64,000 bases of DNA. Origin: Isurus oxyrinchus (Eukaryota). Below, in pieces: positions 32,210 to 57,797 of this stretch. The stretch is from the NCBI GenBank assembly GCA_026770705.1, contig JANJGN010000012.1, positions 100,006,001 through 100,070,000 on the forward strand, written 5' to 3'. How positions within the stretch are numbered: position 1 is the first letter of the stretch; every line of letters begins with the position of its first letter. Below the pieces are notes generated by a model. It was not told where the DNA came from. It saw nothing but the letters and a program-made list of their open reading frames with translations, and did no database searches. The position numbers and the translations under genes were made by a program.

Positions 32210-32479
32210 GGGCGGAATCGTCCCAGGTTTGCACTAGGTGTGGTAGCAGGTAAACCGACATTTTCCTCCTAGCCAGGATGGTAGGTTTTCATGCCGAGTC
32301 ATCGCAAACCCGCCACTTTACTTATGCATTCCCGGGAAACACGGCATTTCCATGGTAGGCGGGCTCTCATTCGCCCACCAGGCCATCACCTCACTGCTTC
32401 ATCACGCCGGGCACCAAATTTAAAGTGCAGCCACACACTCACATCGCAATGTTTCCAGTCCAGGACTACTGCAGGGAAG

Positions 32480-33639
32480 ATGTCCACAAATGGCAAAAAA
32501 AATGCATCCCCCAGGTTTAGCGGCGCATCACTGGAATGTCATTTGGATACCATGGAGGCCCAGCACGATGTCCCCTAGACCCTGCTCTGGGCGTAGGTGG
32601 GCAGCAGCGTGACCAACCAGGCTTGGGAGGCTGTGGCAGTGGTGGTCAATGCCAATGCCCTTCAAAAGAGGACAGCCACCCAGTGCCACAAGAGAATGAA
32701 TGATCTCCTCCATTCTGCCAGGGTAACTCACTTTTCTCATCAGTCTCAACTCACACCCTCACAAACCCATCATACATCCACAGGGCTCTCAGTCACTGCC
32801 AGTGCAAAGGACATCACCATTTACTCCCTCACATACACTTTCATTGTCCTCATCCTGTCCATGGGACTCCTCAATGCCAACACAGGCCAGGCATACTTAT
32901 TATCTGGCCTGGCAGGCAGCCTGCTTACACTCTCTCCATCTCTTTTCATGAAGGACAAGCTGGCACACAACAAGAGGGAGAAGTCACAGACTGGCGGAGG
33001 AATGCCTGAAATCAAGGTCCTCACTGACTTTGAAAACAGAGCCATCCAGTTGGCTGGCAACGATCAGGACCAGTCCAGTGCTGACAGTGAGGTTGGCGCT
33101 GCTGTACCAAGTGAGGGTTCAGCAGTGCAACATCCATCAGACAACCATGCCATGAGTGATGAGTCCTGTTTCACAGGCCACTGCCATGTGCTCATTATCT
33201 CCCCTTGCTTTCGCAGGCACATCTGCCAAACAGCCGATTGAGTCTATGACCCAGGGCCTCCAATCAAGCCCCGAAGAAACCTCTGAAGAGGAATCTGAAG
33301 GTGCCCTCCTTGAAATCCCAAGACAGCGTTCACCCATACCCTGCACCAATGCAGAGACACACACTTCAGTGGGACTTGACTTTAGAATAGTCTCAGGATC
33401 ACAATCTGGTGAATACATCGCACTTTCTGATCCACAGCAGGTGGGACTTCCCAAGTATCCGGCACTCAGAGGACTCCAAAAGCAGGCCGGGACCTTCCAG
33501 ATCTCAGCCCTCTAGAGGACATCCACCAAGGCCATCACAGACAGTGCATTGCAGCCAGCAGGCTGCCTCCACCTTTGCTATGGATGTCTGGGGAGCACCA
33601 AGATGTAGGGGCAGGGTTAGGAAAGTTAAGAAGATGTAA
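32480..33639 (+). pseudogene. Spliced Harbinger Myb/SANT gene of element A
   Basis: MSTNGKKNASPRFSGASLE...AWEAVAVVVNANALQKRTATQCHKRMNDLLHSAR|gt; DKLAHNKREKSQTGGG; ends GAPRCRGRVRKVKKM* at 33639. Confidence 0.8.
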
Positions 33640-33789
33640 CACTTTCGGAGTCAACCAATTAACTAAATTAACAAAATGGGGACAAAGTAAAAGCAGCCCC
33701 TTAAATTAGGGAAACTGCATGAGCCAAAGACAAAATTTAAAGGAAACTTATCAACCTTAAACCAAAATCTGATTAAAGAGGTCAATAAA

Positions 33790-36100
33790 TTACCCCAGTC
33801 CCCATGGTGCCCACCAGGCACAGACACTGCGTGCTCCCTCTCCAGGGACACCTGGCCGCAAATGTAGCCACAGACAAGGGGCAGACTGTCAGCGCGGACG
33901 ATCCCCTCAATCGGCTGCTGCCTGGACATGTTAATGGCCAACTTGGCCAGGCCCAGGAGCAGGTTCACGAGGAGGTCCTCCTCCCTCACTGCCCCCCTCA
34001 CTGGGTGCCTGTAGATCAGAAACGTGGGACTGAAGTGCAAACAAAATATCAGTAAAAGTTTTTTTAATAACAGAAAAGGGGGTCCAGCATCCAGCACCCT
34101 ATGTAAACATTGTGCATGGATTCCACAAGGCCGCAAAAGGCACAAGTATCCTGAGAGTCCGTGAACCGACATCCTGCGGTTATATGGGACTGCTGCGTGC
34201 AACATCCTCCAGCCCAGATCCCTGATAGAAAGTGAGAGGACACCTCCATAGAGGGCCCCTCAACGGGGACCACTGCCGTCGGATGGCAACAAGGCACGCC
34301 AGGGCGTGTCCGGGGGTGTGGGCGAGGACAAGGAAGTGAAGGGTGTGCATCAGCCCATACAGGAAACCCCTCTGCGCCGTGCTAAACGACTCAGAGGGCA
34401 TTTCTGCAAGGTGGCTCAAGTTGCACGTCATCAGCTCCTGAGGGAGGGTTCGGGGCTTGGGGCCGATGTGGAATTCCGTCTGAACAGAGGTACGCTCAAA
34501 CGGAAGGCCACCTACGTCACCTCGAGACTCAGAATGACGTAGGGGTCGAGCACGACCGTCCTAAGGTCTTGAATGGCATTGACTGCGAGCCAGATGTCCA
34601 TGGGCATGCACCAATTCCTGTGGAAGCATCCAGCCCACTCCTCCACCACCCAGCATGTCCCCAATCCTGGTCACCCGGCAGCCACAGCCCTCCTCTCTGC
34701 CGACCACTGTAAAGGGTGGAGGGCTGGATTCCTGAGCAGTGGCTCTCTGACAATAGCTGCTACTCCTGATGGCGGAGAGCTGCATCGCGAGGTGACCATG
34801 TTCCAGACTTTGATCAGGTCCTGATAAAAGACTGGCAATGCCTGCAAGGAGCCACAAAGGCCCCTCAGGTCTACAAGGAGCCTGTACGTCATAATTCAGA
34901 CCGTGCACCTGGTGGAAGAAATACATCACCAGGGCACACCATCTCGGAGGGGGCTCAACATATAGGTATCGCTGCAGGGCCTGAAGACGGAAAGTCACCA
35001 CCTGGGTGCATGGGCACACCAATGCCTGACCACCCTCCCTAAGCAGGAGACTCAGAGCCTCAGCAGTGACCCAGTGCAGCCTTTTGTCCCAGAAGAAGTC
35101 GACAAGCAAACTCCGGGTTTTTGTGACAAAGTCTGGGGGAGGGGGTCAAAATGACCAGCCGGTACCACAGAATGGCAGCAATCAGCTAGTTTATGACCAG
35201 AACTCGACCCTGGTATGACAGCACTCGGAGCCGTCCTGTCCAGCGCCCAGACAAGTGATGACTTTGGTCTCCAGCTCCTGCCGGTTCGCTGGCCAGGATT
35301 CCTCAGCAGGGCAGAGCTGGACCCCTAGGTAGAGGAGGCTGGTCCTGCTCCAGGTGAAAGGCCTGAGCTCCTTGGGTAGGGGATCCACCTGCCATTGACT
35401 GACCAGGAGTCCAGAACATTTACCCCAGTTGATCCTGGCAGAGGACATGGCAGAGTAGACCTCCTGGCACTTGTGCAACCTCCGCAGGTCAGCCGGGTCG
35501 GTGAACATGAGGAGCACATCATCGGCATAACCTGAGAGGACCACCCCAATGCCCGACCTGCGCAGGACCAATGTCGCCAGATGTCCACCAAGTTGAAGGA
35601 CTGGACCAGGTCCCACCACTTACTCACACCTCGCATGCAGTGCTGGGAACCGTGATGGTCCCGGGTCTTGAGGATACAGTTGAAATCCCGCACGAGGACG
35701 ATGCACTCGCCCGTGTCAATGGAGCCCAGAGGAGTGGACACTTCCTCAAAGAAGCTTGCTTGCGGCTGTGCGCCCATGGGAGCGTGCACATTCACAAAGT
35801 GAAGCACCGCGCTCCCTAGGTCCACAGTAAGATGCAGCAGACAGCCTGGCACCGGCTCCTTGATCCTTAAGATCACTGGTTGAAAATGTGGGGCCAACAA
35901 GATAGCCACCCCACCAGAATTGGAGACTAGGTGACTCCTCGCCACTCCAGGAGCCACGCAGCTTTGTCACTCGGAATGGTATGGGTTTCCTGCAGGAAGC
36001 ACACCACATACGTCCCATCCCGGAGGACCGAGAAGTTCTGGAACCTGCGCTGTGCGTCCCTGCTGCCGTGGATGTTGAGGCTGGCTATGGTAGTCTTCAT
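33790..36100 (-). pseudogene. Tx1 ORF2 with most of the RT deleted (junction at 35570/35571)
   Basis: ATG at 36100. EN motifs run to 'LVDIWRH' and join directly to 'VLRRSGIGVVLSGYADDV'. Copy B has about 1.4 kb (61286-62710) between the same points. Confidence 0.8.
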
Positions 36101-36139
36101 TGTCAGAAGTATGTGCTACCATCACCGAGACTAAATAAA

Positions 36140-37938
36140 AGGAGAGACTCTTCTACATCTTCCTCTCCTTCAGGAGCCCAGCGAGAAATGTGTGAACCCT
36201 CCGCCGGGCATTCCTGTCCAACTCAGGGGCCTTGAAAGCCTCGCAGGTGGACAGAACACCAGCAGATACAAATGCCACCAGTCCATAGACAACTGGACCC
36301 TGTCTCGGCGACTGTGATTACTCACCAGAAAATCCTGAAGTTCACCAATGGGGATGAGGGTGGAGTCGACAGTGGGCACCAAAGCCCTCATCACCTCACC
36401 TGGCTCCAACGACTCTAGGTCATTGGTTGTCCTCACTATCGACAACCCAGCTTCCTCTGGGTCGTTGCCTCTGGCTTCTGACTCTTCTCCCACATTGAGT
36501 GCAGGGGCTGTTTTGGAGCCACCAGCTGGCTCTGTCTCTAACCCCCAGGATCAAGGCCAGAGGGGTCCTCTCTGGCCTCCTCTTAGATTTACAGGTCAGA
36601 GGGTGGCAGAGGCTTGGAGACCCGCTCTGCCTCAGGCACCGGGACACCAGGCGTATCCGGAAAAAGTTCCGTGCTCAGAACTGTAGCGCCTGGTGCCAAA
36701 GGCTGAGATGGAGAAGGGAGGCCCTCCTTGCCACCAGCACCCAATGACCCAATCGTTGGGGCCATGAAGGGACTGCCGCAGTCCCCTGGTAAGCCAGATG
36801 AGTGGGGGACGTCTCTTCTGGTGTAGGCTGGGTCTGGGGAGACCTCCATCTGGGAGGCCACTGCCGCCTCGTCTTGTGTTGCCGGGCACTACATCCTCTG
36901 GGGTTTGGGCAGGTCCACCCTTTTTAATAAGACCACCGAGTTGGGGTCGCGCCGGGCCCAGCACATGGCGCTGAGGCACACATGGGCCTGGGAGCATGCG
37001 CGGACAGGTCGCTAGGCATGGATGATGTCTTTCCCCACTAAGCTGGTGTTTTCAGGGGGGATTGTTTGGTGGTGTTGGGGGCTTTGGGGGGTCTGGAGGG
37101 CTGCCCCCAGGTGGCGGGTCTTCCTTTGTACCTTCTTACGGTGCAGGGGCTCTCCCCCTGCCTCACCAGCAATCGGGATGGCGGTGGCAGCTGGCGGCAC
37201 TTCCCTTTGCGGGGAGGAAGATGGAGCGGTGGAGGGGGGGAGGAGTGGCGGTGCCAGCCTCGGCCGCCTGGATGTTGTTGACAGCCTTGGAGGCGGGGCA
37301 GTTCTTCCTCACATGTCCCACCCCCTTACAGGTATGGCACCGCATGCTATCCGCCGAACAAAAGACATTGTAGGTGGCCTCCTGGAGTTCTAAGGTAAAG
37401 GCCCCCTCCAAGCACTCCTCCCAGGCCAGGCGAACAAAACCCGGCGCTGGAAAGAGTACACATGGCAGAGGGCCGAATCCTTGAGGCCGAGCGGGATCTG
37501 TGCAACCTCCAGCCTGATCTCCCCCCAGTTGATGGAAGTTGGGGAGGAGGAGCTCACTGGAGACAAAGAGCGGAACGTTCAAGATTATGATCCTCTGGGC
37601 GGTGGCCTCCAGAGGGTCCACCTCCAGAGAGGTCCCGCCCACAGTGAGCCCCTTTTCCAGGGCCAGGTGCACTGCCCACTTGGACCTCAGGAAAAATATG
37701 GCCTTGCTGTACATCTTTGAGGCGGTGAATATGGCTGAGGAGCCGACAACCCCAGCCATAGCCTTAACGCACGCCTCAATTGTCATATTGGGGTGAGTAT
37801 GGCTCTTTACCCTGAGTTATTTTGTCACAAGTTTAAAGGGTGATGGGGCTGCAGGAGCAGCAGCAGGAGCAGAGGTGCCACTGCCCCTGCATCGGTGACC
37901 TTGGATGGCTCCATCATGGGCGATGACGGTGTCGCCAT
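36140..37938 (-). pseudogene. Tx1 ORF1 (RRM-like region plus CCHC zinc knuckle), disrupted
   Basis: ATG at 37938; ORF 37163-37786 contains 'ASKMYSKAIFFL', 'IIILNVPLFVS' and CX2CX4HX4C. Confidence 0.8.
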
Positions 37939-38657
37939 GGGTTCCTAGAGCTATACTCACCCCCAAAAAATGTAAGTGCAATAGGAAAGCAACGGGGGAG
38001 TTGGTGGCGGCATTGAATCCCCCCCACCCCGCCCCAGGAAAGAATGGGGGAGAGAGAGAGAGGAGGGCACAGTCGGAAGGACAGTGAGGCACAAGATGGA
38101 CAAGTGCCACAGGTGAACGGTGTGTTGTGGGGGGATGGGTGGAGGAGAAGGAGATGATGTCTTGATTCTTGGGTTTTTTCAGACAGAAGGAGGAGAGTAT
38201 CTTCGCCCAAGGCAACTGGAACTGCTGGCATACAGTCTCTCTAACTCTTCACCGGGCAGCCTCAGCAAACCTGCACTTGGGGTGGGGTGAACACACAAAG
38301 GTCTTTCCCAAATATGCCCACACCTCTCAGATGTTCCTCTTCCTTTCCCTCCCCCTGTAAAAACACAAGTCCAATACAGATCTCCCCTCTTGAGTACACA
38401 CCTTTCGTAGCACCACCGGAAATCTTCTCCCTCCTGGTCCACTCCTTTCCTTCTTCTCTCACTGAAGTAAGCCATGAGCCTCAGGTGTTGAGCTGCTGGG
38501 AACCCCCCCCCACCTGCCCCTTGCAGATGGGCAGTCAGCAGCAGCTCAGTCCCAGCCTTCTAATAAAGTTGCAGGCTCCTGCAGAGCTCCAAACACTAGC
38601 AGCCATTACAATAGCAACAGGGTGTGGCAGCAGAATGGAATACCTCCTCCTCCTCCT

Positions 38658-38912
38658 NNNNNNNNNNNNNNNNNNNNNNNNNNNNNNNNNNNNNNNNNNN
38701 NNNNNNNNNNNNNNNNNNNNNNNNNNNNNNNNNNNNNNNNNNNNNNNNNNNNNNNNNNNNNNNNNNNNNNNNNNNNNNNNNNNNNNNNNNNNNNNNNNNN
38801 NNNNNNNNNNNNNNNNNNNNNNNNNNNNNNNNNNNNNNNNNNNNNNNNNNNNNNNNNNNNNNNNNNNNNNNNNNNNNNNNNNNNNNNNNNNNNNNNNNNN
38901 NNNNNNNNNNNN
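38658..38912. other. Assembly gap (255 N)
   Basis: Run of N between the Tx1 5' UTR, which ends in (cct)n, and the Harbinger transposase. Confidence 1.
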
Positions 38913-39225
38913 CCACACCAAAACCCGGGATATCCAGGCATATGCAATCACCTCTGCATCCTGGCTGTTCTGGTCCTGGGCAACAAGCACAAATCTCTGT
39001 ACCCTTTTTGTGGGTGGAGGCTTGTGTTATCCCACGGAGTTCATCTGTGGAGCTCTGGAAGGAGCCACCGGAATAGAAATTGAGCACCACGGTCACTTTC
39101 ACAGCCACTGGCACTGGGTGCCCTCCGTGTCCCCTTGGCACCAGGTCCTGCTGTAAGTGGCAGATGCAAGTGACCAGTTCCCTAGACATGCACAGTCATC
39201 GGTGACACTGGTTCTTGGTTATCTA
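38913..39225 (-). pseudogene. Harbinger transposase N-terminal part (element A)
   Basis: MSRELVTCICHLQQDLVPRGHGGHPVPVAVKVTVVLNFYSGGSFQ, closely similar to 51864-52388. Confidence 0.85.
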
Positions 39226-40959
39226 CAGGACTGAAAGGCAGCATCTATAGAACCCTGGGTCTAGCTATGGGCCGACCAGTGACAACTCGCGTGAATTTCT
39301 AGCAGGGTCTGCGGCCGCCCCAGCCATCTCTTCTTCCTGAGGGTGTTGCTCCTCCCTCTGTGCAGCCAGGTGCCTTAGTCGCTCTTTCCTCAATCATCTT
39401 TGCTCTCTGTACATCACTGGCATACAACTAGATCACCAAGATCCATGATCCTGCTGTGCTCCTCCTGCAGGATGAAAGAGAGAGAGACATATGGGTTAGC
39501 ATGGGTGCACTAAAATCATGCCGGATGGCCAGAGATTAATGCGCTGCATGGCTGCCCAAAATCCCACCCACCTCCGCCCCACTCCACCTGAATAATTGGT
39601 GGCAGATTTGCCCACTGGACTGCATGCTGTGCTCTCAGCTCAGGTGCATGCATTCCCCTAACTTGCAGTGCAAGGCTACACGATGGGGGAGACAGATCCA
39701 AACTGGGATGCTGACAATGCAAGGGGCTGTGAGCGCCTCCAGCAGTGACTGCTCCATGGCCAGCTTTAGCAAGGAGGCAGTACAATGTGTGCAGTCATCC
39801 AGCTGTTCTGCAATCCACTAAAATGCTCATGACTTTGCAGTCTGTGCTCAAGGGGTGAAAATCTCTGGAGAACTTGGTGACACTTTGATGTCTCTGTGTT
39901 GCTTGAGTGGGCAGAGAATCTAGAAGCCCAACTCCAATCATATCAATGTGGCCACATGGCCACTTCCCTTGTCCACCACCAAACCCCGCCCCCCCCCCCC
40001 CGAATACTTGTGCGTTACATTCAGCCACAGGGCAGCCCTAGCTCCCATGCCAAGTCACCACAACCATAGGGCTGCACTTGCCTGCCCCCGAAGTCACTGC
40101 AACTGCAGGGCTGCCCTTGTCCCACCCTTCGATGTTCCTCAAGCTTGAAGTCCAACAAATACCGTGGTGAGCACTATGCAATGTTACTGTGCACTCACCT
40201 CCAAGTTCCCCTCAAAGTGCAGCCCACCAAGTGCATGGCTTTTATATGCTGGTGTGAACATGGCGGTATGCTTTCCCACTGACGTGGGCGGACGATCCAG
40301 TGGGTTGGGGGGACGATGCCGGCGGGCAGGCCTAATAATGATATGCAAATGTATTACAATGAGGTTTCCGATGACCGATGGCGGGAAATGTGGCCCGCCA
40401 TTGGTGGCTGAATGGATGATCACAAACTGGTTTCACACCGCCGTGAAACCGATCGATCCATATTGTCTGCTCAAGCCAGCGAACACGCCCGGCAAGCACA
40501 GAAAATCCTGGCCTCAGTGTGTGGAAGTGTTTCCTAATTTCACTCTAAAATGTCTGGCTATAATTTATTTGACTATATCCCCTAGTCCTAGATTCCTCAA
40601 AAAGCGGCAATAGTTTATTCCTGTCTACCTTGTCTGTTCCCCTTAATATCTTGAAGACATCAGTCAATTCAACACTTAGCCTCTAAAATTCTACGGGTTA
40701 CAACCCTTGTTTGTGTAATCTTTCCCTGTAATATAACCCTGCCTTCTCTTTTATGTAACATGACTTACCTTTGACACCACCACCTTCCTCCATTTCCCCA
40801 TGCCTTCTAATAAAGAGACATTCCTCAATCAACAACCAATCCTACAACATGACAATACATCAACTGTCTTTACCCCAACATTACAACACCACCTAAGTGA
40901 ATAAATTATTACCAAATAAATGCATCTTTTCCTGTATGATTCTAACCTCCATGAATAAC

Positions 40960-41330
40960 AAGCCCAACCACCCAACACCCACCAACCTGACTATCCACCC
41001 CCCCAAGCTGACTACCCAACTCCTGACCCAACTACCCACACCGACTCCTACTGACCTGACTTCCCAACCCCTGACACCCCCAAAACAACCAATTGCCCAG
41101 TCCCCGAACTAACTGCCCACTTGTCCCTGACTACCCACCTATCCACTCACATAACCACCCACCCACTCACTCACCCACCCACCCAGTTACCCACTCACTC
41201 ATCCAGTCACCCACTCACCCAGTCACTCACCCACTCATTCACCCACCCACTCACACACTCACCCATCCATTCACTCGTTCACTTACCCAGTCACTCACCC
41301 ACCCTCTCACACAGTCACTCGCTTACCAAA
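40960..41330. repeat. C/A-rich tandem repeat (cact/cacc 4-mer variants) within an interspersed repeat
   Basis: Visible 'cactcacccacccagtcact' array, with downstream sequence similar to 640-730. Confidence 0.85.
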
Positions 41331-41834
41331 AGCCTTTGAGATCTTTAAACACTTACCTAAATATGGCAACTGATGTTGTAAAAAGGGAGCACGTCCTTTG
41401 TGTTACTCCTGTTTATCGTTGCTTTTGGTGGATGTCTGCACTGAAGCATTGCTTGTGTAGTGGAGCTAGAAAGCTCTGGCTGGAAGGAGGTAAAAAGGTC
41501 AGGATGCAGTGATCTTCATTGTCAACGGGGATCACCACTGACTGGAAGATCAATCATTATACTATTACAGTAATTAAAAACCTACCTATTTACCTCTGTA
41601 TAATCAAAACAATAAAAAATACTTTACCGTTCGCTCTCAGAATACATTAGTCTTTCACAGCTTCTTGCAAGATGAAACACTGCTGAATTCTACAAATCAT
41701 TATTCTCTAAATACATACCTGAATACTGGTACTGATTCTCCTTCACCATGTGCTAGAGACAGGCATCCTTCCTCAGATTAGCAACAATCACATTGAAATG
41801 CAATAAAACAGCTCAATCCGTGTCTTCTAAATAA

Positions 41835-42170
41835 AAGGACTTGCATTCATACAGCAGATTTGACAACCATAATGAGATCCCAAAGTGCTTTCCAGCTAAT
41901 GAAGTACTTATTGAATTATTCTAATCTGAGGAAGCAAGGCTGCCAGTTTACAAACAATAAGCTCCCACAAAGAGAAATGATATAATGAACAGATAATCAG
42001 CTTTAGTGATGTTGGTTGAAGGCTAAAATTGCCAGGATAACAGAAGAACTCTCCTGCTATCCTTTGCATAGTGCTCTGGGATCTTTAATATCCACCTGGA
42101 AGGTAGAAAGGACTTCAGTTTAACATCCAAAAATCAGCACTCTCTCAGTACTGCATTGAAGTATTCAGAA
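41835..42170 (-). mobile_element. Deu-type SINE (SacSINE/AmnSINE-like), degenerate
   Basis: 'acttgcatt.ata.ag...cccaaagtgcttt.cagc.aatgaagtactt...caagctcccacaaa...gtgatgttggttgaagg'. Family assignment is from recall. Confidence 0.6.
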
Positions 42171-45555: not shown

Positions 45556-45556
45556 C

Positions 45557-46157
45557 TGGACGACCCTCTCGATTGCCCACTTCCTGGACCTGTTAATGGC
45601 CAACATCGCCAGGCCCAGGAGCAGGTTCACGAGGAGGTCCTCCTCCCTCACTGCCCTGCTCCATACCAGGTGTCAGTAAATCAGGGGTGTGAGACTGAAG
45701 TGCAAACAAAACAACAGTATAAGATTTTTAAAATAACTGAAAAGGGGTGCAGCCTGCAACAATTAACATAGACATGGTCCATGGACTCCACAAGGCCGTA
45801 AAAGGGGCAGGCATCTTGGGAGTCAGTGAACTGACAAACCCTAAGGTTGTATGGGACTGCCGTGTGCAACACCCTCCACCTCAGGTCCCCAGTTGGAAGT
45901 GGGAGGACATCCCTGTAGAGGGACCTCCACTGGGGACCTTTGCTGCCGGACGACAACAAGGCACATCAGGGTGTCCGGGTGGTGGGCGAGGACAAGGAAG
46001 TGAATGGTGTGCAGCAGCAGCCCATACAGGAAACCCCTCTGCGCCATGCTAAAGGGCACGGAGGGCATTTCTACGAGGTGACTCGGATTGCAGGGCACCG
46101 GCTCCCAAGGGAGGGTTCAGGGCTTAGAGCCAATGTGGAATTCCATCCGAACAGGAT
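45557..46157 (-). mobile_element. Tx1 fragment, copy C (ORF2 C-terminal zinc-finger region), truncated at both ends
   Basis: Collinear with ~33895-34485; 'DLRWRVLHTAVPYN...ACPFYGLVESMDHVYVNC'. Confidence 0.85.
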
Positions 46158-47300: not shown

Positions 47301-47779
47301 CCTCATAACTGTTGACTCTCTTATAGGTCAAAAAGTGTCTAGCTCAACCTTGAATATATTCAATGATTCAGCCTCCACTGCTGTAGGGCGTCCAGCATAA
47401 CTCACCTTGCCCTCAACCTCTCTGCTTCTCTACCTTTCTCTCCTTTTTTAGTAGCTCCTTAATAACTCTTTGACCAAGATTTTGGGCACCTGTCTTAATA
47501 TCTTCTTATGTGTCTCAATATCAGATTTGTTTGATAAATCTCATGTAAAGTACCATGTGTCATTTTATTATGTTAAATATGATGTATAAATGAAGTTGTT
47601 GTTGAAAGAGGACTAAAACAATGGAGTGAAACCCTGAATTTCTTGGTAAAGAACAAATATTATAAGTAACTAGCTCATGGCTCATAGTAATATTTTAGAG
47701 GTAATTTTTAGTTCTGGGAAGATTAAAAATTAACTGTAGAAAATGGGATAAATACAACTAAAGCAGCTTGGAGTTTATT

Positions 47780-48695
47780 ATGTTTAAAAGGTTGGGGCCA
47801 CGTTGACCTAAGGGGTTAACAGCTGAAAGGTGTAGCTGGGCAGATTGGAGCTTGGTGAAACACAGGGGCAATGCTCGCCGAGTGAAGCTACCCAGCTATT
47901 AAAGAATTGAAATTGCACCGGTATGTAGAGGTTGGAGTGTCAACTCAGAAATCCACGGGAATGGAGTCTTGGGGGACGAGATTGAAACCCTGGGAGGTGT
48001 GCAGTTGTTGAGGCAATCCAAGTTGGAGAGGCTTTAGGGGAATTCAGAGGTTTGATCTGTGAAAGTGAAAGGTTTGGAGTTCTTCATGATGGAGATAGTT
48101 TCAATGAGATTGAAGCAGAATACTGTGCATGCTGAAAATCTGGAATAAAAACAGAAAATGCTGGAAATGTTCATCAGGTCTGGCTGCATCTGTGGAGAGA
48201 TAAATAGAGTTTACGTTTCGAGTCTGTTTTGAAGAGTTGTATGGACTCCAAACGTAAACTCTGTTCCTCTCTCCACATATGCAGCCAGACCTGATGAACT
48301 GTTCTAGCATCTTCTATTTTTATTTCAATGTGATTGGTTGACTCATAGTGTTTACTGATGTCTGGGTGGGCTGCTGAGAAATTCAGAGGATCTGTCTTGG
48401 TCTCATTTGCTATTTATTGTACAGTGTGGTGTGTTCGACCACACTGTGTTCTTAATTCACATTTACCTCATATTAGCCCTGAATGTTAGAGCATAAGATA
48501 AATATTGTAAATTGTTTTATATTTCTGATCCTACACAGTAAAGTTTATTTTTGTTTATTCAACACCTGTGAAATCTTGTGGCTTTATTCTCTAAGCAGTG
48601 TCTTGAATCTCAAACTTAGTCTACTTTAAACAAAATATCATTGGTCCCTAATTGAATCGTACCAAAAACTTGGGAGTCTGGTCGAGGATCATAAC
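47780..48695 (+). mobile_element. Probable solo LTR-like repeat (left boundary uncertain), interrupted by a hairpin element
   Basis: Ends 'gtctggtcgaggatcataaca', an LTR-like CA terminus. No coding evidence. Confidence 0.35.
48113..48322. mobile_element. Hairpin Penelope-derived element with a 14-bp TSD
   Basis: Arms ~48145-48224 and ~48244-48322 are reverse complements. Flanks are tttcaatgagattg (48099-48112) and tttcaatgtgattg (48323-48336). Confidence 0.8.
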
Positions 48696-49829
48696 ACAAA
48701 GAACTATGAGCTTGACTGAAATAGAATGCCTGATGGTCTTTACTTATTGGGGAGAGAAAAGTATGTATAAGCGTGGTGGAGTGTTAGTAAGATAAAATTT
48801 GAAGTAACTGAAAGGAAGAAATAATGATAATAGTTGCAGAGATGAGGCAAGGTCTACAGAATGATAAGAGATTCTTTCTATTTTAATGTTATGATAATTA
48901 AACAGTAGATTTAGGAAAATAAACCATATAAAACAATATTCTACAAGGGTTTTCAGGAGAACTACATGTGACATCTAGATAAGATGACATTGGAGAGGAG
49001 CCATCTTCTTCTCCCAAGGCAAAGAACTTGTTCAATTCTTTGTCTTGAGTTGTATTTGCTAGAAAAAAGCTTGTATGAAAAGTTATTACTTGCTTTCTGG
49101 CACAAACTTCTGTGCCGTATGTTAAATTCTTTAAAGTTATAAAAATAACTAGAGTGTATTGACAATTCTTAGCCTTTAGTGTTTTGAACTTGAGTGAAAT
49201 CTTATTGGCATAGTACCTGTTTTCAGCTTTTTATAGTGATATATGGATGGTCTTCAGAATAAGTCATTGGGCACAGTGTTCATTAGGTAGTTGATGTGTC
49301 ATTGACCTCAACACACCATTATTAGTTTGATGTTTCAGCATATTGCGGAGCTAGTATAGTATGATGTTAACGGAGAACTCTAAAGTCCAATTAACAGCAG
49401 TCAACGCATGGCAGCAAATTCAGGCCCTATTGAACAATCAGTTTGACTCAGTAATAAACTCTGCCGGGTTTAGAGGAGATGCATGATTAAAGGTTATGAT
49501 TTCTTCTACTCAATTTTAGATAACTCTGTCAACCAATTTACCAATTGGTTGGTAGTGCTGGCTAGACAAGTAGTGAGAAGCAGTTCTGATAGGTTGAATG
49601 ATGCTCAGCATGGTGGTCCTCAGGGGTCAGGGGTGGGCCTTCAGACTGCTCATAATGAATGGCTGCTGGTGAGCCTCAAAGGGAGAAGAAGGACATGTCA
49701 TTAGTTTAACTCATTAGACTGTCAGTGTGCATGGCACCCTGATGAGACAGAGATATGCATCATGGTGGTCTCGTCTTTCCATTATCAATGGAGGTTCCAG
49801 GTTTGAGGTTCACACCAATATAGAGACTA

Positions 49830-50589
49830 CACTGGAATGGTAGCAATTATCGACATTCTTACTTCAGTGTGCTGCATTCTTACCTTTCTCTGGCCCCCCA
49901 ACCTCACCGCTCCGCTTGACCGAGGTGCATGGTGCCTCTCCAAGCTCCAGGGCCTCCTACTCGTAACGTATGATGATGACGAGGTGTGGGGGTCCTCAGC
50001 CAGTCCGTGACCTCTCAGCATTGTTATGGGATGTCTTCTTCTGAAAAGATAGAGGAGCCTTGATTAGTCCACCGTCTACCGGCAGCACCATTGCAGCCTG
50101 GCCAACCCCACCTGAGGAACACCTCGCAGGGCTCAGCTGATTAATGAACCTGGAGCCGCAAGGCATTCAGTCCAAGCAGCCAGGACTCACCCCCTTGGCC
50201 AGCTCCTGCCTTATTGACATTTGACACTCACAGTCTAACACTTCTGAGGTCCACAGGGGAATGGGCAGCTCTTAACTGTTCTGCAAAGTGACCCATGCCA
50301 ACATGGGACTCACCCTTCCCAATCGCAGGAGATCTTTAACGTGCTTCCGGTACTGCATCCATGTGCGCATCACCATGTCATGGCTGTTGACCCTGGATGC
50401 CAGCTCCTCCCAGGTCTTTTTGGTGAGGTGGGTGGGCCTCCTCCTCCTATCCCTGAGGACAAGGGTTCTTCTCCTCGCTGCCACCTCCTCCAGGAGGGCT
50501 GCGAGGTACTCATCCGAAAAACACGGGGCTGACTGCCCTGCTGGCCTGCTGTATCCACCCGCTACAATTTCCATTCGCAACATTTCCAT
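49830..50589 (-). pseudogene. Harbinger Myb/SANT gene 5' exons (family of 18201-20511)
   Basis: 'APCFSDEYLAALLEEVAARRRTLV...KKTWEELASRVNSHDMVMRTWMQYRKHVKDLLRLGR|gtgagt'. Confidence 0.8.
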
Positions 50590-50619
50590 GTCCTTCGGTG
50601 GCAGCCGAAGTGTTTCTCA

Positions 50620-52487
50620 ACAGCATATATAAGGCGTGCACTTGGTGGGCTACACTTTGAGGGGAACTCGGAGGTGAGTGCACAGTAACATTGTGCAGCA
50701 CTTGTGAAGGATGCCTGTTGGACTTGAAGGTTGAGGCACATTGTGGGGGTGGGCAAGGACTATCCTGTGTTTGAGGTGAGTTGGGAGGGGGCCAAGGGCT
50801 ACCCTGCAATTGAGGCAAGTTTGGAGGGGGCAAGGGCTGCCCAACAGTTGAGGCCAGTTGGGGGAGAGGGGCAAGGGCTGACCTGCATTTGAGGTGAGTC
50901 TGGAGGGGCCAACGGCTGCCATGCAGTTGAAGCAAGTTTGGAAGGGGCAAGGGCTTCACTGCAGCTGATGGTGATACACACGCACGTGTGGGGTGGAGGT
51001 TGGGGGGGTCAGGGGGGAAGCGGCCACACATCAGGGGAACATTGTCTAAAGTGACCATTCCTCCACAGCTGAGACAGTTTAGATGCAGCCACATTGACAT
51101 GTTTGGAGTCGGGCCTCTAGCTTATCTGCCCACTCAAGCAACGCAGAGGCACGAAAGTGCTTTTCACCAGTCGGGCACAGACTGCAAAGTAAAGAGCATT
51201 TTAGTGGACTGTAGAACAGTTGGACAGCTGCGCACATTGTACAATCTCCTTGCAAAACCTGGCTATGAAACAGTCACTGTGGAAGTGCTTATGGCCTCTT
51301 GAAATGGCATCATTCCGGTTTGGATTAGTCTCCCCCATGGTTCAAGCTAAAAGTGCAGCCTTGCATTGTGGGTTTGGAGAATGCGTGTGACTGAGCTGAG
51401 AGCACAGCATGCAGTCCAGTTGGCAAAGCTGCCACCAATCGGTCAGGTGGAGTGGGCAGAGGACTATGGGGTTTCAGGCAGCCATGCAGCGTACTAAACT
51501 CTGGCTATCCAATTGGTGGCCAGTACTCTCAGGGATGTGTTAAGGGGCCTTCAGACTTAACTAAAAGAGGTTCTTAGTACACGCATGCTAACCTACACGT
51601 CTCTCTCTTTCATGCTGCAGGATGAGTACATCAGGAGTAAGGAGCCTGGTGAACCAGCTGTATGCCTTGTGGTGTACAAAGAACATTGACGAAGGAGAGG
51701 AAAGTGACGGAGACAGCTGGCTGTACAGAGCGAGGAGCAGCACCCTCAGGAAGAAGGGGTGGCTGGGACTCCCATAAAAGCCGTTGAAGGGCCACAGTGA
51801 GCCATCACCGGTCAGCACCTAGCTAGACCAAGGGTCTGTAGAGGCCACCTTTCATTCCTGCAGATGACCAAGAGCCAGTGTCACCAAAGGCAGTGCATGT
51901 CTAGGGAACTTGTCAGTCACATCAGCCAGCTGTTGCAGGATTTGGTGCCTCAGGGTCATGGAGGGCATCCACTGCCAGTAGCCTTGAAAGTGACCGTGAC
52001 GCTCAATTTTTGCACTGGTAGCTCCTTTCAGGACTCCACAGGTGAGCTCTGTGGGATATCACAAGCCTCCACCCACATATGCATCCATAAAGTCTCAGAC
52101 ATCATCTTTGTGAGGACACACAGCTTTGTGCATTTTGCCCAGGACCAGGAAAGCCAGGATGAAAGAGCAATTGGATTTGCCCAGGTCTTCAGTTTCTCAC
52201 AGTTGCAGGGTACCATCGACTGCACTCACGTGGTGCTCAGATCTCCATGGCAACAAGCAGTCAACTATGTCAACTGCAAGTGCTTCCATTTGTTGAATGT
52301 GCAGCTGGTGTGCAACCACCACAAAAGCATCCTGCAAGCCTGGGCTTGGTTTCCAGGGAGTGTCCATGACATCTACATCCTCAGTTGATCACAGAGCCCT
52401 GATGTCTTTCAGGGTCCACAGAGGGTCCTTGGGGTCAAGGGGATGTGGCTGATGACACCTGTGCAGCAACACAGGTTGCAGCAGCAG
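50620..52487 (+). mobile_element. Harbinger element 'B', 5' part: promoter/leader and transposase N-terminal two-thirds (51864-52487)
   Basis: Reverse-complement homologue of ~38913-40255. TATA-like 'catatataag' at ~50624. Motifs QGTIDCTHV, LNVQLVC, FPGSVHD and WLMTPV. Confidence 0.85.
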
Positions 52488-53043
52488 GTAAGCAGGAAAG
52501 GCTTTTGATCACATAGCTCACTGATATGTGTCAATTTGCCCACTTTTCAAGAATGAATTCCACTGGACCATCTGGCACAGAGAGCTGGAAGAGGGACAAA
52601 GGCAGTGGAACGAAGAACAAAAGAGCTCAAAATGTCATTGAGACTGACCTCCAAACCTAATTGAGGACAGTGAACATAGGAGATAAAGACTTCTGGGTCA
52701 ACACGGGAGGAAATGTTAAGATATTTTTCTCATGTCATGCAGAAGAAGGTTGCACTGCCAGCTATCTTACTGCCAGTCCTGCAGACCAGTACTAAAAGTT
52801 TAATGACCCAACAAGGGCTGGCATGTTAACTCATTGACTGCAGTTCATTTTTCACTTGGGCACTGTGGGCCCTAGTGCACTCTTCACTCTTGAAAATTAA
52901 AAGCTCCACAACTAACCCATCATAGTTTTTGGGTGTTAAAGAGGTCACACAGTTGAGATCCTACAATATGTGTAGCATCTCTCCTAACGGCATTTGTATG
53001 GAGTATCTTAAAACCCTTTCCTCTACTTCAGTAGGGTGATACC

Positions 53044-54315
53044 TGTAGTATAAAGGTCTGGCACATAAAGGGTTAAAGTGGGACTGAGTACAGTACTGCC
53101 CTCACAGTGATGTAAGAGAATACATGACCCGCACCTAGGGGTTAGTGTAGTGTTGGATCGAACAGTGTATAGAAGCAAGCATGGAGACAGCCCCTAGCTT
53201 GGATCTTTATTGTATCTATGTATACAGTTTCTAGTAGTTAATAAATACTTACTGTTAAATTACCTAAGGCTAAGAAGACCTTAATAAGACCTACTGAACA
53301 ACGCCCAATGCCTTACAACACAGCAGCAGCGAATGGAACAACTCAAAGCCTTGCAGAGACTGCAGGAGAAAATTAAAATCCTGGAAAACAGAAGAAAAAA
53401 TCAAAGAAGCATTCTGGCCTGAAGAAAAGTTCAAGAAGTGAAGGTGCGAAAGGAAATTGCCAGAGAAAATGCTTGGAAGCCAAAGGCAGAAATTAAATTC
53501 CTCACTGCAGCAGAAGACTGCATTGAATCCCGTGGAAGCCCAATTTCAATACCCAGATTGTGAAGAGTCAGCAGACCTAGCAGCGCTCAGCTAACAATTT
53601 TAAATTTCTGTACAGCACTGGTCCTGAAAAAAAGTTAAATTTAATAAACGTGTTCAACAGCCAGGAGAACCTGTCAGCGCCTTCATGAACCAGATTTACA
53701 GAATATGATTACGGTGACCTGAAACCTGAGCTAATCAGGGATAGAATAGTTGAATGAGTGGTTGATGACACAGTCTCAGACATGTTTCAAGCGAAAGGAG
53801 ATCCAACCCTTGAAAAAGCCATCAAAGTTGTCAGGCAATCTTAAACCCATTTGTAGCACAGATCCATGTTAAGGGGTGAAAGCAAACTGTGGTGCAAAGT
53901 AAACGCCACTGTCCAGCTAGGGAAAGAGCACAGAAATAGGGACACTCCAGGCCAAGGGAAGTAATACCCTAACAGATCAGTAGAGCAACCATTCCAGTGC
54001 TGTGGAGCAAACTACCCTCACAGACGTGATCAAAGTCAGGCAACTTTAGCCCAATGCTTTCAGTGTGACTGAATAGGACACTTCAGGAAGTTATGCAAAG
54101 CTAAAACTTCAAAACACACAGAAGAACCGAAGAGGGTTTGCAAGGTTGAGACAGCGCACCAAGAGGACACATGCTTCTTGGATGAGATCAAAGTTCCTGG
54201 ATGTTCATTCTGGAATGCAGACAGCTCAGTTAATGGCCATCTCACGAACATTAAGTTGGACACAGGAACCAGTGTTACTGTCCTAACAGACAAAAAACTG
54301 TGGCTGAGAGACCTC
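53044..54315 (+). mobile_element. Truncated Gypsy-type LTR retrotransposon: 5' LTR (53044-53320), gag and protease relics
   Basis: LTR runs TGTAGTA...ACAACA with an internal AATAAA. Gag-like ELIRDRIV and LEKAIKVVRQ, knuckle CFQCD*IGHFRKLC, protease KLDTGTSVTVL. Confidence 0.75.
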
Positions 54316-54319
54316 TGGA

Positions 54320-56597
54320 CCTAAAGACCTAGGAAACAGTGACCGTAACACGGTAGAATTTAGCATTCAGTTTGAGAGTGAGAAATTTGGGTCGGAAAAA
54401 AACTGTGCTAAAGTTAAATAAGGGTAATTACAAAGGAATGAGGGCAGAGTTGGCTGGACTGGACTGGGAAAGGAGTTTAGCAGAAAAGATGGTTGATGAA
54501 CAAAGGTAGACATTTAAGAAAATAGTTCAAGACTCACAACAAGGATATATCTCAGTGAGGAAGAAAGGTTCTAGGAAGGGGATAAACCAACCATGGTTAA
54601 CCAAGGAAGTTAAGGATAATATCAAATCAAAAGAAAAAAACATACAATGTGGCAAAGATTAATGGTAGGCCAGACGATTGGGAAAGTTTTAAAAACCAAC
54701 AAAAGATGACTAATAAATAATAAAGATGGAGAAAATAAACTTTGAGGGTAAACTAGCAAGTAATATAAAAACAGACAGTAAGAGCTTCTTTAAATATATA
54801 AAAAGGAAGAAAGAGGCCAATGTGAACATAGGCCCCTTAGAGAATGAGGCTGGGGAAATAATAATGGGGAACCAGGAAATGGCAGAGGAGTTGAATAAAT
54901 ACTTTGCATCAATCTTCACGGTAGAAAACACCAATAGCATTACAAAAATACAAAATAATCAAGGGGCAAAAGCCGGGGAGGAAATAAATACAATAACTAT
55001 CATTAGAGAAAAAGTATTATGGAAATTAATGGGGCTAAAGACCAATACGTCACCCAGGCCTGATGGGTTGCATCCTAGGATATTAAAGGAAGTAACTACA
55101 CAAATAGTGGATGCACTGGTAGTAATCTTCCAAGAATCCTTAGATTCTGGAAAAGCCCCAGAAGACTGGAAAACTGCCACTGTAATGCCCTTATTCAAAA
55201 AGGGAGGGAGACAAAAAACATGTAACTATAGGCCAGTTGGCTTAACATCTGTAATTGTGAAAATGTTGAAGTCTATTATAAAGGATGTAATAGCAGAACA
55301 TTTAGGAATGCATAATCCAATCAAGCAGAGTCAGCATGGCTTCATGAAGGGGAAATCATGCCTGACAAATTTATTGGAATTCTCTGAGGATGTATGAAGC
55401 AGGATAGATAAAAGGGAACCAGTAGATGTAATATATTTGGATTTCCAAAGGTGTTTGATAAGGTACCGCACATAAGGCTACTTAATAAGATAAGAGCCTG
55501 TAGTGTTGGGGGTAGTATGTTAGTATGGATAGAGGATTAGCTAACTAATAGAAGACAGAGGGATGCAATAAGAGGGACATTTTCAGGATGGCAACCTGTA
55601 ACTAGTGGAGTGCCACAGGAATCAGTGCTGGGGCCAGAATTATTTATGATATATATTAATGACTTAGATGAGGAAAGTGAATGTAATATCGCCAAGTTTG
55701 TAGATAACACAAAAATAGGTGGGAAGGCAAGTGGTGAGGATGACACAAAGAGTCTAAAGAAGGACATAGACATGTTAAGTAATTGGGAAAAAAATTGACA
55801 GATGGAATATAATGTGGGAAAATGTGAGGCTTAAATAGAGAAAGACTGCAGAAAGCTGCAGCACAGAGGGATTTGGGAGTCCTTGTGCATGAATCCCAAA
55901 AAGCTAACATACAAGTTCAGCAGGTAATAGAGAAGACAAATGGAAAGTTGGCCTTTATTTCAAGGGGAATGGAGTATAAAAATAGGAAGTCTTGCTAAAA
56001 CTACACAAGGCACTAGTTAGACCACATCTAGAATACTGTGAACAGTTTTGGACCCCTTATCTAAGGAAAGATATACTGGCATTGGAGGCAGTCCAGAGAA
56101 GGTTCACAAGGTTGATCTTGGGGATGGGGGAGGATTTTCTTATGAGGAGCGGTTGAGCAGGTTGGGTATGTACACTTTGAAGTTTAGAAGAATGAGAGGC
56201 GAATATTATTGAACATATAAGATTCTTAGGGGGCTTGACAGGATAGATGCTGAGAGGTTGTTTTTCCTTGTTGGAGAGTCTAGGGCCAGAAGGCATAATC
56301 TCAGATTAAGGGGTCATCCATTTAAGACAGGAATGAGGAAGAATTTCTTCTCTCAGAGGGTACTGAATCTGTGGAACTCTTTACCACAGAGGGCTGTAGA
56401 GGCTGGGTCATTAAGTATGTTCAAGGCTGCAATAGACAGATTTTTAATCAGTAAGGGAATCAAGGGTTATAGGGAAAAGGCAGGAAAGTGAAGTTAAGGA
56501 TTATCAGATCAGCCATGATCTCATTGAATGGTGGAGCAGACTCAATGGACCAAATAGCTTACTTCTGCTCCTATGCCTTATGGTCTTATGGTCTTGT
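54320..56597 (+). mobile_element. 5'-truncated CR1-type LINE (ORF2 RT) with a cttatggt tandem tail
   Basis: ORF 54726-55397 (SPRPDGLHPRILKE, NYRPVGLTS, QHGFMKGKSCLTNL) and 55610-55798 (PQESVLGP, KFVDNTK). Tail 'cttatggtcttatggtctt'. Confidence 0.9.
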
Positions 56598-57730
56598 GGC
56601 AGCCTCAGAATGCAACAGAGCGAAGGTATAATGAGAGTCATGCAGCAGCTCACAACTTGGTGAAGCAGGCCATTGGGATGCTAAAAATGAGGTTACAGTG
56701 CCAGGACTGGTCTGGTGGAGCCCTGCAATACAGTCCACAGAGGGTGTCACACATCGCTGACGCCTGCTGTGTCCTTTACAACCTGGCACTGAAATGGGGA
56801 GAGGAGCTGGCTGAGGAGGAGATGCAGGAGCTGGAGGTCTCCTCAGATGAGGAGGACACCGATGGGGATGAGGGTAATGAGATCCTTGAAAGTGACGATG
56901 ATGGGAATGAGGCCATCGCACTGGCCAGATGAGGCAGGTTCACTCGGGAGGCCCTCATAGTTGCTAGGCTGTGGGGGATGATGACAACATGCAGTGAGGA
57001 GGCACCATAGATCCTCACATCGCATCTGTGAAGGTTTGACTCCAGTCTGGCTTATGGCAGATAACATACCCTCCGTGATAAATCTCCTGTCATGGAGATG
57101 TAGTGGAGGCCCTAATAGTTGCTCGATTCCGGAGGATGATGATGACATGCAGTGAGGACATTCCACAGCTCTTCACATAGCCTCTGTGAATGTCTGAATC
57201 ATGTCCTGCTGAGGGCAGCTCACTTGCGCTCTGTGATCAGGGGCATGTCTTGGAGACCCAGCCGTGAAATTTTAAATGCACCAGACCCTTTTGTCAGCCT
57301 TCAGCACCTGACCCCTTCAGGAGCACAGCTTCACTGGTCACAGATGCTGATGAGATGGGGGCCAAATCTGCCTTAAAGGTGCTGAGAGCACACAGAAAGA
57401 ATGACAGAACTCTGTGACACCTTCCAACTACATTCTGGCAGCAATGACAAACAATGTCAAGGTGCAAGCATCAGCAATGTGGCCAGGGATTGTGAAGCCA
57501 GACCATCATGTTGGTCTCAAGGCTGCACAAAGCACAGGGAAGAGGCCCTGGACTGAGACATCTGCCTTTATCTTGTGCAGGAACCAAGGTTTCACATCTG
57601 AGTGACATAAACGCCGCTCATCAGAACAAGGAGCCATAGGCAAGGAGGCATTTTTGGGAGTTTATTGACAATAGTGAACATTATGTGCAAGTGATAACAC
57701 CCGCGCACTGGCTGCACAAATTACAGCTTC
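56598..57730 (+). mobile_element. Harbinger element 'B', 3' part: transposase C-terminus, intergenic region, and 3' UTR/stop of the convergent Myb gene
   Basis: 'ERRYNESHAAAHNLVKQAIGMLKMRLQCQDWSGGALQYSPQRV' plus an acidic tail. The minus strand at 57730-57661 reads gaagctgTAA...gtcAATAAA. Confidence 0.8.
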
Positions 57731-57797
57731 CTGGTTGGACACAGGTACAGCTTGCTGCTGCTGCTGCTACAGTTGTGTGCTGGCAGTGTTGCTGGCC

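What the first reader, a model, noticed from the sequence alone, without database searches (positions are those of the whole stretch)
33600..57760. Two Tx1 retrotransposons sit at apparently the same site, the Myb-gene stop codon, of the same Harbinger family
Seen: copy A's 3' end abuts 'gaagatgTAA' (33630-33639), the stop of the Harbinger Myb/SANT ORF. Copy B's 5' end abuts 'ttacagcttc' (57721-57730), whose reverse complement 'gaagctgTAA' is a 9/10 match and is followed on that strand by AATAAA about 55 nt later, as expected for the Myb 3' UTR. Both hosts have closely similar transposases, and both Tx1 copies are sense to the transposase and antisense to Myb. Established: Tx1-clade elements are often target-specific (Xenopus Tx1L inserts in the DNA transposon Tx1D; Keno in U2 snRNA genes; Kibi/Koshi in microsatellites). 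Inference: the 10-mer is the target-site duplication of a Harbinger-specific Tx1 family. The insertion would leave both Harbinger ORFs intact. Only one junction per copy is visible (A's 5' junction is in the gap, B's 3' end is outside the window). I cannot confirm that this is undescribed.
Basis: partly seen in the sequence, partly recalled or inferred. Interest (0 to 1): 0.9.

Follow-up and report, generated by a model that had tools for sequence, protein, structure and literature searches.

The report
Shark Tx1-like LINE homing into Harbinger
Two decayed copies of a Tx1-like jumping gene sit at what looks like the same spot, the end of the Myb gene, in two related Harbinger DNA transposons of a shark; this habit is already described for Tx1 elements in frogs and crocodilians.

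Summary
Partly confirmed. Copy A (minus strand, 33640 to the gap) abuts GAAGATGTAA. Its TAA is the true Myb stop: a Mustelus Myb protein and a third, uninterrupted Harbinger in the window both support this.

In copy B the 9/10 10-mer (57721-57730) and an AATAAA 54 nt beyond it are present. What starts 8 nt to its right is a 108-nt fragment resembling the element's own RT region, not a clean full-length 5' end. Collinear A/B 5'UTR begins only at 58029. That fragment still places an independent Tx1 boundary next to the 10-mer, which makes the match meaningful.

No copy shows both junctions, so a target-site duplication is not shown. The two sides of the N gap are not continuous: about 1.7 kb would be expected, against 255 N.

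Reads from two shark labels show a multi-copy Tx1-Myb junction.

Both Harbinger genes are broken in these copies.

Kojima (2015) already reports Tx1 families targeting Mariner and Harbinger transposons. This scan has also noted the same pattern at least 13 times on other DNA of this genome.

Verdict: a new member of a known kind, of modest interest.

The parts
32207..33639 (+). Harbinger A, arm with the degraded Myb/SANT-like gene; stop TAA at 33637-33639. The left end is approximate.
   Evidence: Pfam Myb_DNA-bind_4 is weak. Shark homologues P0008 (74%), P0010 (67%) and P0009 came, were read and named; P0009 scores Myb_DNA-bind_5 at 3.6e-10. In-frame stops and frame changes are seen. Read depth rises from about 32302.
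33630..33639 (+). 10-mer GAAGATGTAA: last codons and stop of Myb; proposed target and 3' copy of the duplication.
   Evidence: In the third Harbinger the stop lies at the same place, 11 residues after the shared G-A-(A)-P-R.
33640..38657 (-). Tx1-like copy A, from its 3' end to the gap. It is decayed, and about 1.45 kb of RT core is deleted (breakpoint about 35513/35571).
   Evidence: Collinear with B at 63-84% identity. zf-CCHC in ORF1 and RVT_1. The ORF2 C-terminus aligns with P0004-6 and P0025, with an ORF stop at 33663-33665.
38658..38912 (.). Assembly gap (255 N). It hides A's 5' junction; its two sides are not continuous.
   Evidence: Not filled.
38913..40513 (-). Harbinger A, arm with the transposase N-terminus (39189 down to 38913) and upstream region. 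The right end is approximate.
   Evidence: 72-73% identical to B 50614-52181. 44 of 60 residues identical to B's transposase.
50614..52580 (+). Harbinger B, upstream region and N-terminal two thirds of the transposase.
   Evidence: DDE_Tnp_4 at 3.2e-07; translation.
52581..56632 (.). Nested foreign insertion or insertions splitting transposase B: a gag-like stretch and another LINE RT (54726-55397).
   Evidence: Boundaries are approximate, taken from the translation.
56633..56932 (+). Harbinger B transposase C-terminus.
   Evidence: Peptide positions.
56933..57720 (.). Presumed Harbinger B intergenic region and 3'UTRs. It contains a tandem duplication (56947-57256) and a minus-strand AATAAA (57661-57666).
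   Evidence: No similarity to Tx1 and none to the third Harbinger's spacer (129 of 300 shuffles reach the score). Assigning it to Harbinger is an inference.
57721..57730 (-). 10-mer GAAGCTGTAA (read on the minus strand), a 9/10 match to A's.
57739..57846 (+). Tx1-derived fragment resembling B's own RT region 62548-62654.
   Evidence: Local-alignment score 24.5 against shuffle mean 13.0 and maximum 18.0; 0 of 200 shuffles reach it. It is the best non-self blastn hit in the whole window, E 0.001. No Pfam hit for the 39-aa translation.
57847..58028 (.). Unassigned CTG-rich stretch between the fragment and the collinear 5'UTR.
   Evidence: only weak, low-complexity matches.
58029..64000 (+). Tx1-like copy B: 5'UTR, ORF1, ORF2 (endonuclease, RT). 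It runs off the window about 600 nt before its 3' end.
45558..46154 (-). Third Tx1 fragment, cut at both ends; uninformative for junctions.
   Evidence: 79.4% identity over 601 columns to A 33896-34487; alignment.

Best explanation
A Tx1-like (L1-group) non-LTR retrotransposon family of a shark homes to one short site at the end of the Myb/SANT gene of a very abundant PIF/Harbinger family.

Inferred mechanism: the element's apurinic-type endonuclease nicks the Myb-sense strand just after the stop codon. Reverse transcription is primed there, so the LINE ends up antisense to Myb and sense to the transposase. A second nick about 10 nt away would duplicate GAAG(A/C)TGTAA.

Copies A and B are two separate insertions into two roughly 72%-identical Harbinger copies. 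At B the junction is complex: an RT-derived fragment precedes the full-length element. This could be an earlier truncated insertion partly deleted when B arrived.

Shown: the positions, orientations, homologies and the multi-copy junction. Inferred: the nick positions, the duplication and the order of events.
For: 1. A's Tx1 ends within 23 nt of, and most simply at, the Myb stop. Myb homology runs to 33639. The 'RPGPSRSQPSRGHPPR' stretch matches P0009. The third Harbinger's stop lies 11 residues after the shared motif, as in A. The ORF2 frame stops at 33663-33665.
2. At B, Tx1-derived sequence begins 8 nt from a 9/10 copy of the same 10-mer in the expected orientation. By my arithmetic, chance of such a match within +/-10 nt is about 21 x 31/4^10, or 6e-4.
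3. Both copies have the same orientation relative to the Harbinger genes.
4. A and B differ unevenly: 63% (5'UTR), 72%, 78% and 84% (3' ORF2) identity, against 72-73% for the hosts. In ORF 63016-63831 the mismatches by codon position are 28/31/57 (p 0.0014). This argues for separate source elements.
5. Reads: at 33641, 588 of 620 raw reads of run X22 and 102-106 contigs per run of X1, X2 and X4 carry the same letter, which differs from the window. Contigs reach 40-61 letters past that position. Depth there is 10-15% of the Myb-end depth (33575) and 32-40% of the Tx1 3' depth (33751).
6. Precedent: Tx1 families targeting piggyBac, Mariner and Harbinger transposons (PMC4494074).
Against: - No copy shows both junctions, so no duplication is seen.
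- B's Myb gene and 3' junction are outside the window, and A's 5' junction is in the gap.
- The stretch left of B's 10-mer is assigned to Harbinger only by position.
- B's junction is not a clean 5' end.
- The codon-position test is neutral in two of three segments: ORF1 59/52/68 (p 0.34) and endonuclease 27/23/24 (p 0.84).
- The loose-end table shows 24 rows and withholds 9,552. I therefore could not count how many Tx1 3' ends have other flanks or see an empty site of this family.
- A weak similarity of 57747-57821 to Myb antisense (4 of 300 and 7 of 500 shuffles) is not fully excluded.
Confidence: 0.68

Rival explanations
1. There was one ancestral insertion. A Harbinger already carrying the Tx1 was copied as a unit, by DNA transposition or by an inverted segmental duplication, so A and B are not independent events.
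For: A and B lie 12-18 kb apart in inverted orientation. Host and LINE identities overlap (72% in both Harbinger and the ORF1 region). Two of three coding segments show neutral codon-position patterns. A multi-copy junction would also arise this way.
Against: Identity ranges from 63% to 84% along the LINE, rather than being uniform. There is third-position excess in the 3' ORF2 segment. The structures differ: RT-core deletion in A only, RT fragment at B's junction only. No homology extends beyond the Harbinger ends.
Confidence: 0.12
2. The LINE merely prefers the open or AT-rich spacer between the two Harbinger genes, or lands in the very abundant Harbinger by chance. In that case the 10-mer match at B is a coincidence.
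For: 10-mer matches with at most 1 mismatch are at chance frequency window-wide: 6 against 4.55 expected. The Harbinger is extremely abundant: X22 depth is about 4,000 from 3% of the run.
Against: The match sits 8 nt from an independently located Tx1 boundary in the right orientation. The junction letter at 33641 is shared by about 100 contigs per run.
Confidence: 0.12
3. Tx1 B lies inside the Myb coding region. Sequence right of the 10-mer (57747-57860) is Myb antisense, so B's site differs from A's, or B made a duplication of more than 100 nt.
For: Local alignment to A 33498-33566 scores 15, reached by 4 of 300 and 7 of 500 shuffles. A 'WNHVLAR' match to P0007 has E 2.1.
Against: The same stretch matches the Tx1 RT region much better: 24.5, reached by 0 of 200 shuffles. 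Against the third Harbinger the score is reached by 50 of 500 shuffles. No protein-level hit passes.
Confidence: 0.08

Closest known systems
Tx1-9_AMi of Alligator mississippiensis (Kojima 2015, PMC4494074)
   Same: A Tx1 non-LTR retrotransposon preferentially inserted into Harbinger DNA transposons (passage read).
   Different: Its site is about 300 bp from the 5' end of three Harbinger families, not the Myb stop. The host is a crocodilian, not a shark. The target figure is in a supplement I could not open.
Tx1-Mar families and SINEU of crocodilians (same paper)
   Same: [quoted passage not shown]
   Different: The target superfamily and sequence differ. No stack or SINE is seen in this window; earlier scan notes report them elsewhere in this genome, but I did not check them.
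Xenopus laevis Tx1 (Tx1L) in Tx1D
   Same: The founding case of a LINE living inside a DNA transposon, as cited in PMC4494074.
   Different: Tx1D is a non-autonomous piggyBac element. Here the host carries two genes, and the site is a stop codon.
Keno, Kibi and Koshi (Tx1 clade; Kojima and Fujiwara 2004, as cited)
   Same: Sequence-specific Tx1-clade elements.
   Different: Their targets are U2 snRNA genes and microsatellites.

Membership tests
Tx1 clade of L1-group non-LTR retrotransposons | ORF2 with an N-terminal apurinic-type endonuclease | tested here: met
   B 60841-61575 has 3 hits among 295 candidates, all carrying PF03372. P0001 and P0003 score Exo_endo_phos. Atlas hits are endonuclease clusters.
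Tx1 clade of L1-group non-LTR retrotransposons | Reverse transcriptase domain | tested here: met
   RVT_1 at B 61747-62397 (weak, 0.0038) and at A 35194-35619 (6.4e-06). Both are below Pfam's cut-off, as expected for fragments.
Tx1 clade of L1-group non-LTR retrotransposons | ORF1 of the RRM/CCHC zinc-knuckle kind rather than the Transposase_22 kind (PMC5203782; passages read) | tested here: inconclusive
   zf-CCHC at E 0.0017, below cut-off, in A 37166-37786 only. There is no Transposase_22 hit in any ORF1 piece. B's knuckle is decayed.
Tx1 clade of L1-group non-LTR retrotransposons | RT groups with Tx1 reference sequences in a tree | not testable with these tools
   No reference Tx1 or L1 sequences are on hand. 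Database hits carry no clade names.
Target-specific LINE (Kojima's criterion: one kind of sequence in more than 20% of flanks) | Most or many 3' ends are joined to the same target | tested here: inconclusive
   In the window, 1 of 1 visible 3' junctions and 1 of 1 visible 5' boundaries lie at the 10-mer. Read depth at the junction is 32-40% of the Tx1 3' depth, but clipped and crossing reads could not be told apart.
Target-specific LINE | Target-site duplication flanking one copy | tested here: not met
   No copy in the window has both junctions visible: A's 5' junction is in the gap and B's 3' junction lies beyond 64000.
PIF/Harbinger DNA transposon | DDE_Tnp_4 transposase plus a Myb/SANT-like second gene | tested here: met
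   DDE_Tnp_4 at 3.2e-07. Myb homologues were found and named. P0009 scores Myb_DNA-bind_5.
PIF/Harbinger DNA transposon | Terminal inverted repeats and a 3-bp duplication | tested here: inconclusive
   Only 8-13 nt inverted matches were found near 32272 and 40512. GGCGGG-rich motifs near both ends were seen by eye in the sequence printed by that call and were not scored. No clear duplication was found.

The most novel reading that the evidence does not exclude
A shark-lineage Tx1 family, with thousands of copies, has evolved single-nucleotide homing to the stop codon of its host transposon's Myb gene. The site spares both host reading frames. This would be a parasite-on-parasite relationship not yet in print for cartilaginous fishes, and it would offer a natural endonuclease of defined specificity to study.
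Probability: 0.45. Interest if true: 0.45.

Novelty: new member of a known kind. Interest (0 to 1): 0.33.

Why it matters
It adds a cartilaginous-fish example, with a new target (a stop codon inside a two-gene Harbinger), to the known habit of Tx1 elements of living inside DNA transposons. If the specificity holds genome-wide, it gives a datable record of LINE and transposon co-evolution in sharks and a candidate sequence-specific endonuclease. It does not change the current picture of how such elements work.

Tried and rejected
- Fetching other copies by protein. The Myb ORF gave no hit among 430 candidates. The endonuclease and ORF2-tail pieces gave 3 hits each.
- Metagenome scans. A 21-mer at the Myb end found nothing. 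A protein-profile scan matched 177 stretches, none confirmed.
- Atlas look-ups gave no clade name.
- The idea of a 16-nt 'mini-insertion' between two copies of TACAGCTT (57722 and 57746) was dropped, because the second copy lies inside the RT-like fragment.
- The reading that 57747-57860 is Myb antisense was tested and judged weaker than the RT reading.
- The third Tx1 fragment is cut before its 3' end.
The two flanks match the same repeat in opposite orientations.
- could not show an empty site, because only 24 loose-end rows were printed.
- Literature. Five searches found no paper on a shark Tx1 targeting Harbinger. This covers only the held library, and Repbase or Dfam entries could not be checked. 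Supplementary figures S3-S5 of PMC4494074 were not opened.
Full report
LAYOUT

The window is repeat-rich vertebrate DNA with one N run at 38658-38912. The best matches of the Myb-like gene are uncharacterised proteins of sharks. These are Cetorhinus maximus (P0008 at 74% and P0010 at 67% identity over the matched stretches) and Mustelus asterias (P0009, 572 aa). They came (17 proteins with E up to 0.001) and were named. The genome is therefore a shark's.

Self-comparison and Pfam give two related composite units in opposite orientation.

Unit A:
- Myb/SANT-like gene on the plus strand, ending at 33639.
- Tx1-like LINE on the minus strand, from 33640 to the gap.
- Harbinger transposase N-terminus on the minus strand, 39189 down to 38913.

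Unit B:
- Transposase on the plus strand from 51864. It is split by about 4 kb of foreign insertions and resumes at 56633-56932.
- About 790 nt of spacer.
- The 10-mer at 57721-57730.
- LINE sequence on the plus strand to the window's end.

The hosts are 72-73% identical in DNA. Their transposase N-termini share 44 of 60 residues.

THE GAP, TESTED FIRST

Left of the N run, A is Tx1 5'UTR (38615 matches B 58029). Right of it, A is transposase coding sequence (38937 matches B 52181). In B these two points are 5.8 kb apart. About 4 kb of that is nested insertion, so about 1.7 kb of Harbinger plus LINE 5' end is unaccounted for in A, against 255 N. The two sides are not continuous or in frame. Either the gap is much longer than written, or A carries a deletion. 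I did not fill it.

COPY A'S JUNCTION

The frame ending ...RGRVRKVKKM* (TAA at 33637-33639) is genuine Myb coding sequence.
- 35 codons upstream it reads RPGPSRSQPSRGHPPR, against RPGPSRSRPSRGRPPR near the C-terminus of P0009. P0009 scores Myb_DNA-bind_5 at 3.6e-10.
- A third Harbinger of another family (16717-20511) is uninterrupted. It aligns with A's Myb end: blastn E 0.002, and a local score of 27 reached by 0 of 500 shuffles.
- That third Harbinger stops 11 residues after the shared G-A-(A)-P-R, exactly as A does. One alignment with other gap settings shifts this by 10 nt.

On the LINE side, the ORF2 tail aligns with four related proteins, and its frame stops at 33663-33665. The switch from Harbinger to LINE therefore lies within 33640-33662. 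No poly(A) or simple-repeat tail is present.

The Myb gene itself is dead, with in-frame stops and frame changes. Copy A lacks about 1.45 kb of RT core that is present in B.

COPY B'S JUNCTION

The 10-mer and the AATAAA 54 nt beyond it are there. On its own the 10-mer is not remarkable: 6 matches with at most 1 mismatch in the window against 4.55 expected.

Two readings of the intervening 300 nt were tested.

1. A similarity of 57747-57821 to Myb antisense is weak. The score is 15, reached by 4 of 300 mononucleotide shuffles and 7 of 500 dinucleotide shuffles. Against the third Harbinger the score is reached by 50 of 500 shuffles. Nothing passes at protein level.
2. By contrast, 57739-57846 matches B's own RT region 62548-62654 in the same orientation.
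   - The score is 24.5, against a shuffle mean of 13.0 and maximum of 18.0; 0 of 200 shuffles reach it. The antisense control scores 16.0.
   - It is the best non-self hit in the whole window (E 0.001).
   - Pfam sees nothing in the 39-aa translation.

LINE-derived sequence therefore starts 8 nt from the 10-mer, while the stretch to its left has no LINE similarity. With the boundary fixed this way, a 9/10 match in the right orientation within +/-10 nt has a chance of about 6e-4 (my arithmetic). The junction is thus real but complex: an RT fragment, then 180 unassigned CTG-rich nt, then the full-length element. A simple account is an older 5'-truncated insertion at the site that was largely deleted when B arrived. 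This is inference.

INDEPENDENCE OF A AND B

Identity between the two LINE copies is 63.0% (5'UTR, 902 columns), 72.4% (1,043), 78.3% (1,247) and 83.9% (1,281). The hosts are 72.0-73.5% identical.

Mismatches by codon position:
- 28/31/57 in ORF 63016-63831 (p 0.0014).
- 59/52/68 in ORF1 (p 0.34).
- 27/23/24 in the endonuclease, in the frame set by P0001-3 (p 0.84).

The uneven identity and one of three codon tests favour separate source elements. The other two tests are neutral, so a single ancestral composite is not excluded.

READS

One search listed 24 runs under two coded organism labels. I laid 3 contig runs of one sample (X1, X2, X4) and one raw-read run of the other label (X22) on 32100-35100.
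- Both repeats are very abundant. X22 depth is about 4,000-4,700 in the Myb region and about 900-2,200 in the LINE, from 3% of the run.
- Depth falls from 4,068 at 33575 to 620 at 33641, and is 1,611 at 33751.
- At 33641, 588 of 620 reads and 102-106 contigs per run carry T where the window has A. Contigs reach 40-61 letters beyond that position, so the Tx1-Myb junction exists in many copies.
- Depth at the junction is 10-15% of the Myb-end depth and 32-40% of the LINE 3' depth.
- One X4 contig joins 33626 to 33684 with 25 other letters in between.
- Only 24 loose-end rows were printed and 9,552 were withheld. I could therefore not count other flanks or read an empty site of this family.

COMPARISON WITH WHAT IS KNOWN

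Kojima 2015 (PMC4494074; abstract and passages read) states the following:
- Xenopus Tx1 inserts into the piggyBac element Tx1D.
- Keno inserts into U2 snRNA genes, and Kibi and Koshi into microsatellites.
- The crocodilian Tx1-Mar families and SINEU insert into Mariner-N4_AMi, with tandem copies sandwiching a duplication.
- Tx1-9_AMi inserts about 300 bp from the 5' end of three Harbinger families.
- A family counts as target-specific when more than 20% of its flanks are of one kind.

Ivancevic 2016 (PMC5203782; passages read) links RRM/CCHC ORF1 variants to the Tx1 clade. A's ORF1 has a weak CCHC hit and no Transposase_22 hit. Clade membership by RT tree could not be tested.

Five literature searches found no description of a shark Tx1 at a Harbinger Myb stop. 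Supplements and Repbase were not available.

EARLIER NOTES OF THIS SCAN

13 notes in this same genome hold 'Tx1' and 'Harbinger'. Two follow-ups report stacks of truncated Tx1 copies and a SINE at one 15-base site at the end of the Myb gene. I could not see their sequences, so they are leads, not support. A note on my own stretch (s1-897592) proposed that the A unit sits in one CR1 fragment. The flanks 31651-31736 and 40574-40661 are instead inverted copies of one repeat.

VERDICT

The most likely reading is a target-specific Tx1-like family homing to the Myb stop region of a Harbinger family (confidence about 0.68). This is a new member of a known kind. The duplication, B's 3' junction and A's 5' junction remain unseen.

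Noticed in passing
window 16717-20511: A third, uninterrupted Harbinger of another family: transposase on plus, Myb on minus, convergent, with about 340 nt between the stops. Its last 10 nt before and including the stop (GGCACCTTAG) share only 3 of 10 letters with A's 10-mer by my own count, and it carries no Tx1.
   Followed up: partly
window 49900-50560 (minus strand): The N-terminal half of a Myb/SANT-like gene, closer to the third Harbinger's family. It abuts the left end of Harbinger B, suggesting one Harbinger inserted beside or into another.
   Followed up: partly
window 52581-56632: About 4 kb of nested insertion splits transposase B. It contains a gag-like stretch and a different LINE reverse transcriptase (ORF 54726-55397; RVT_1 at 2.1e-06).
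   Followed up: no
window 56947-57098 and 57105-57256: A tandem duplication of about 152 nt (73.7% identical) just after the transposase B C-terminus.
   Followed up: no
window 31651-31736 and 40574-40661: The two flanks of unit A are inverted copies of one repeat, which is also at 7942-8320. They are not two halves of one split element.
   Followed up: partly
window 33784-33789: An AATAAA in Myb sense lies 144 nt after the Myb stop, inside the antisense Tx1 3' region. It could serve as a substitute polyadenylation signal for an interrupted Myb gene, or be chance.
   Followed up: no
window 35513/35571 compared with 61285-62730: Copy A has lost about 1.45 kb of RT core that copy B retains.
   Followed up: yes
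window 32302-35100 (reads): Both the Myb-bearing Harbinger segment and the Tx1 3' region are present at very high depth in runs under two organism labels. One raw read differs from the window only at 33641, so the second label is the same species or a very close one.
   Followed up: partly
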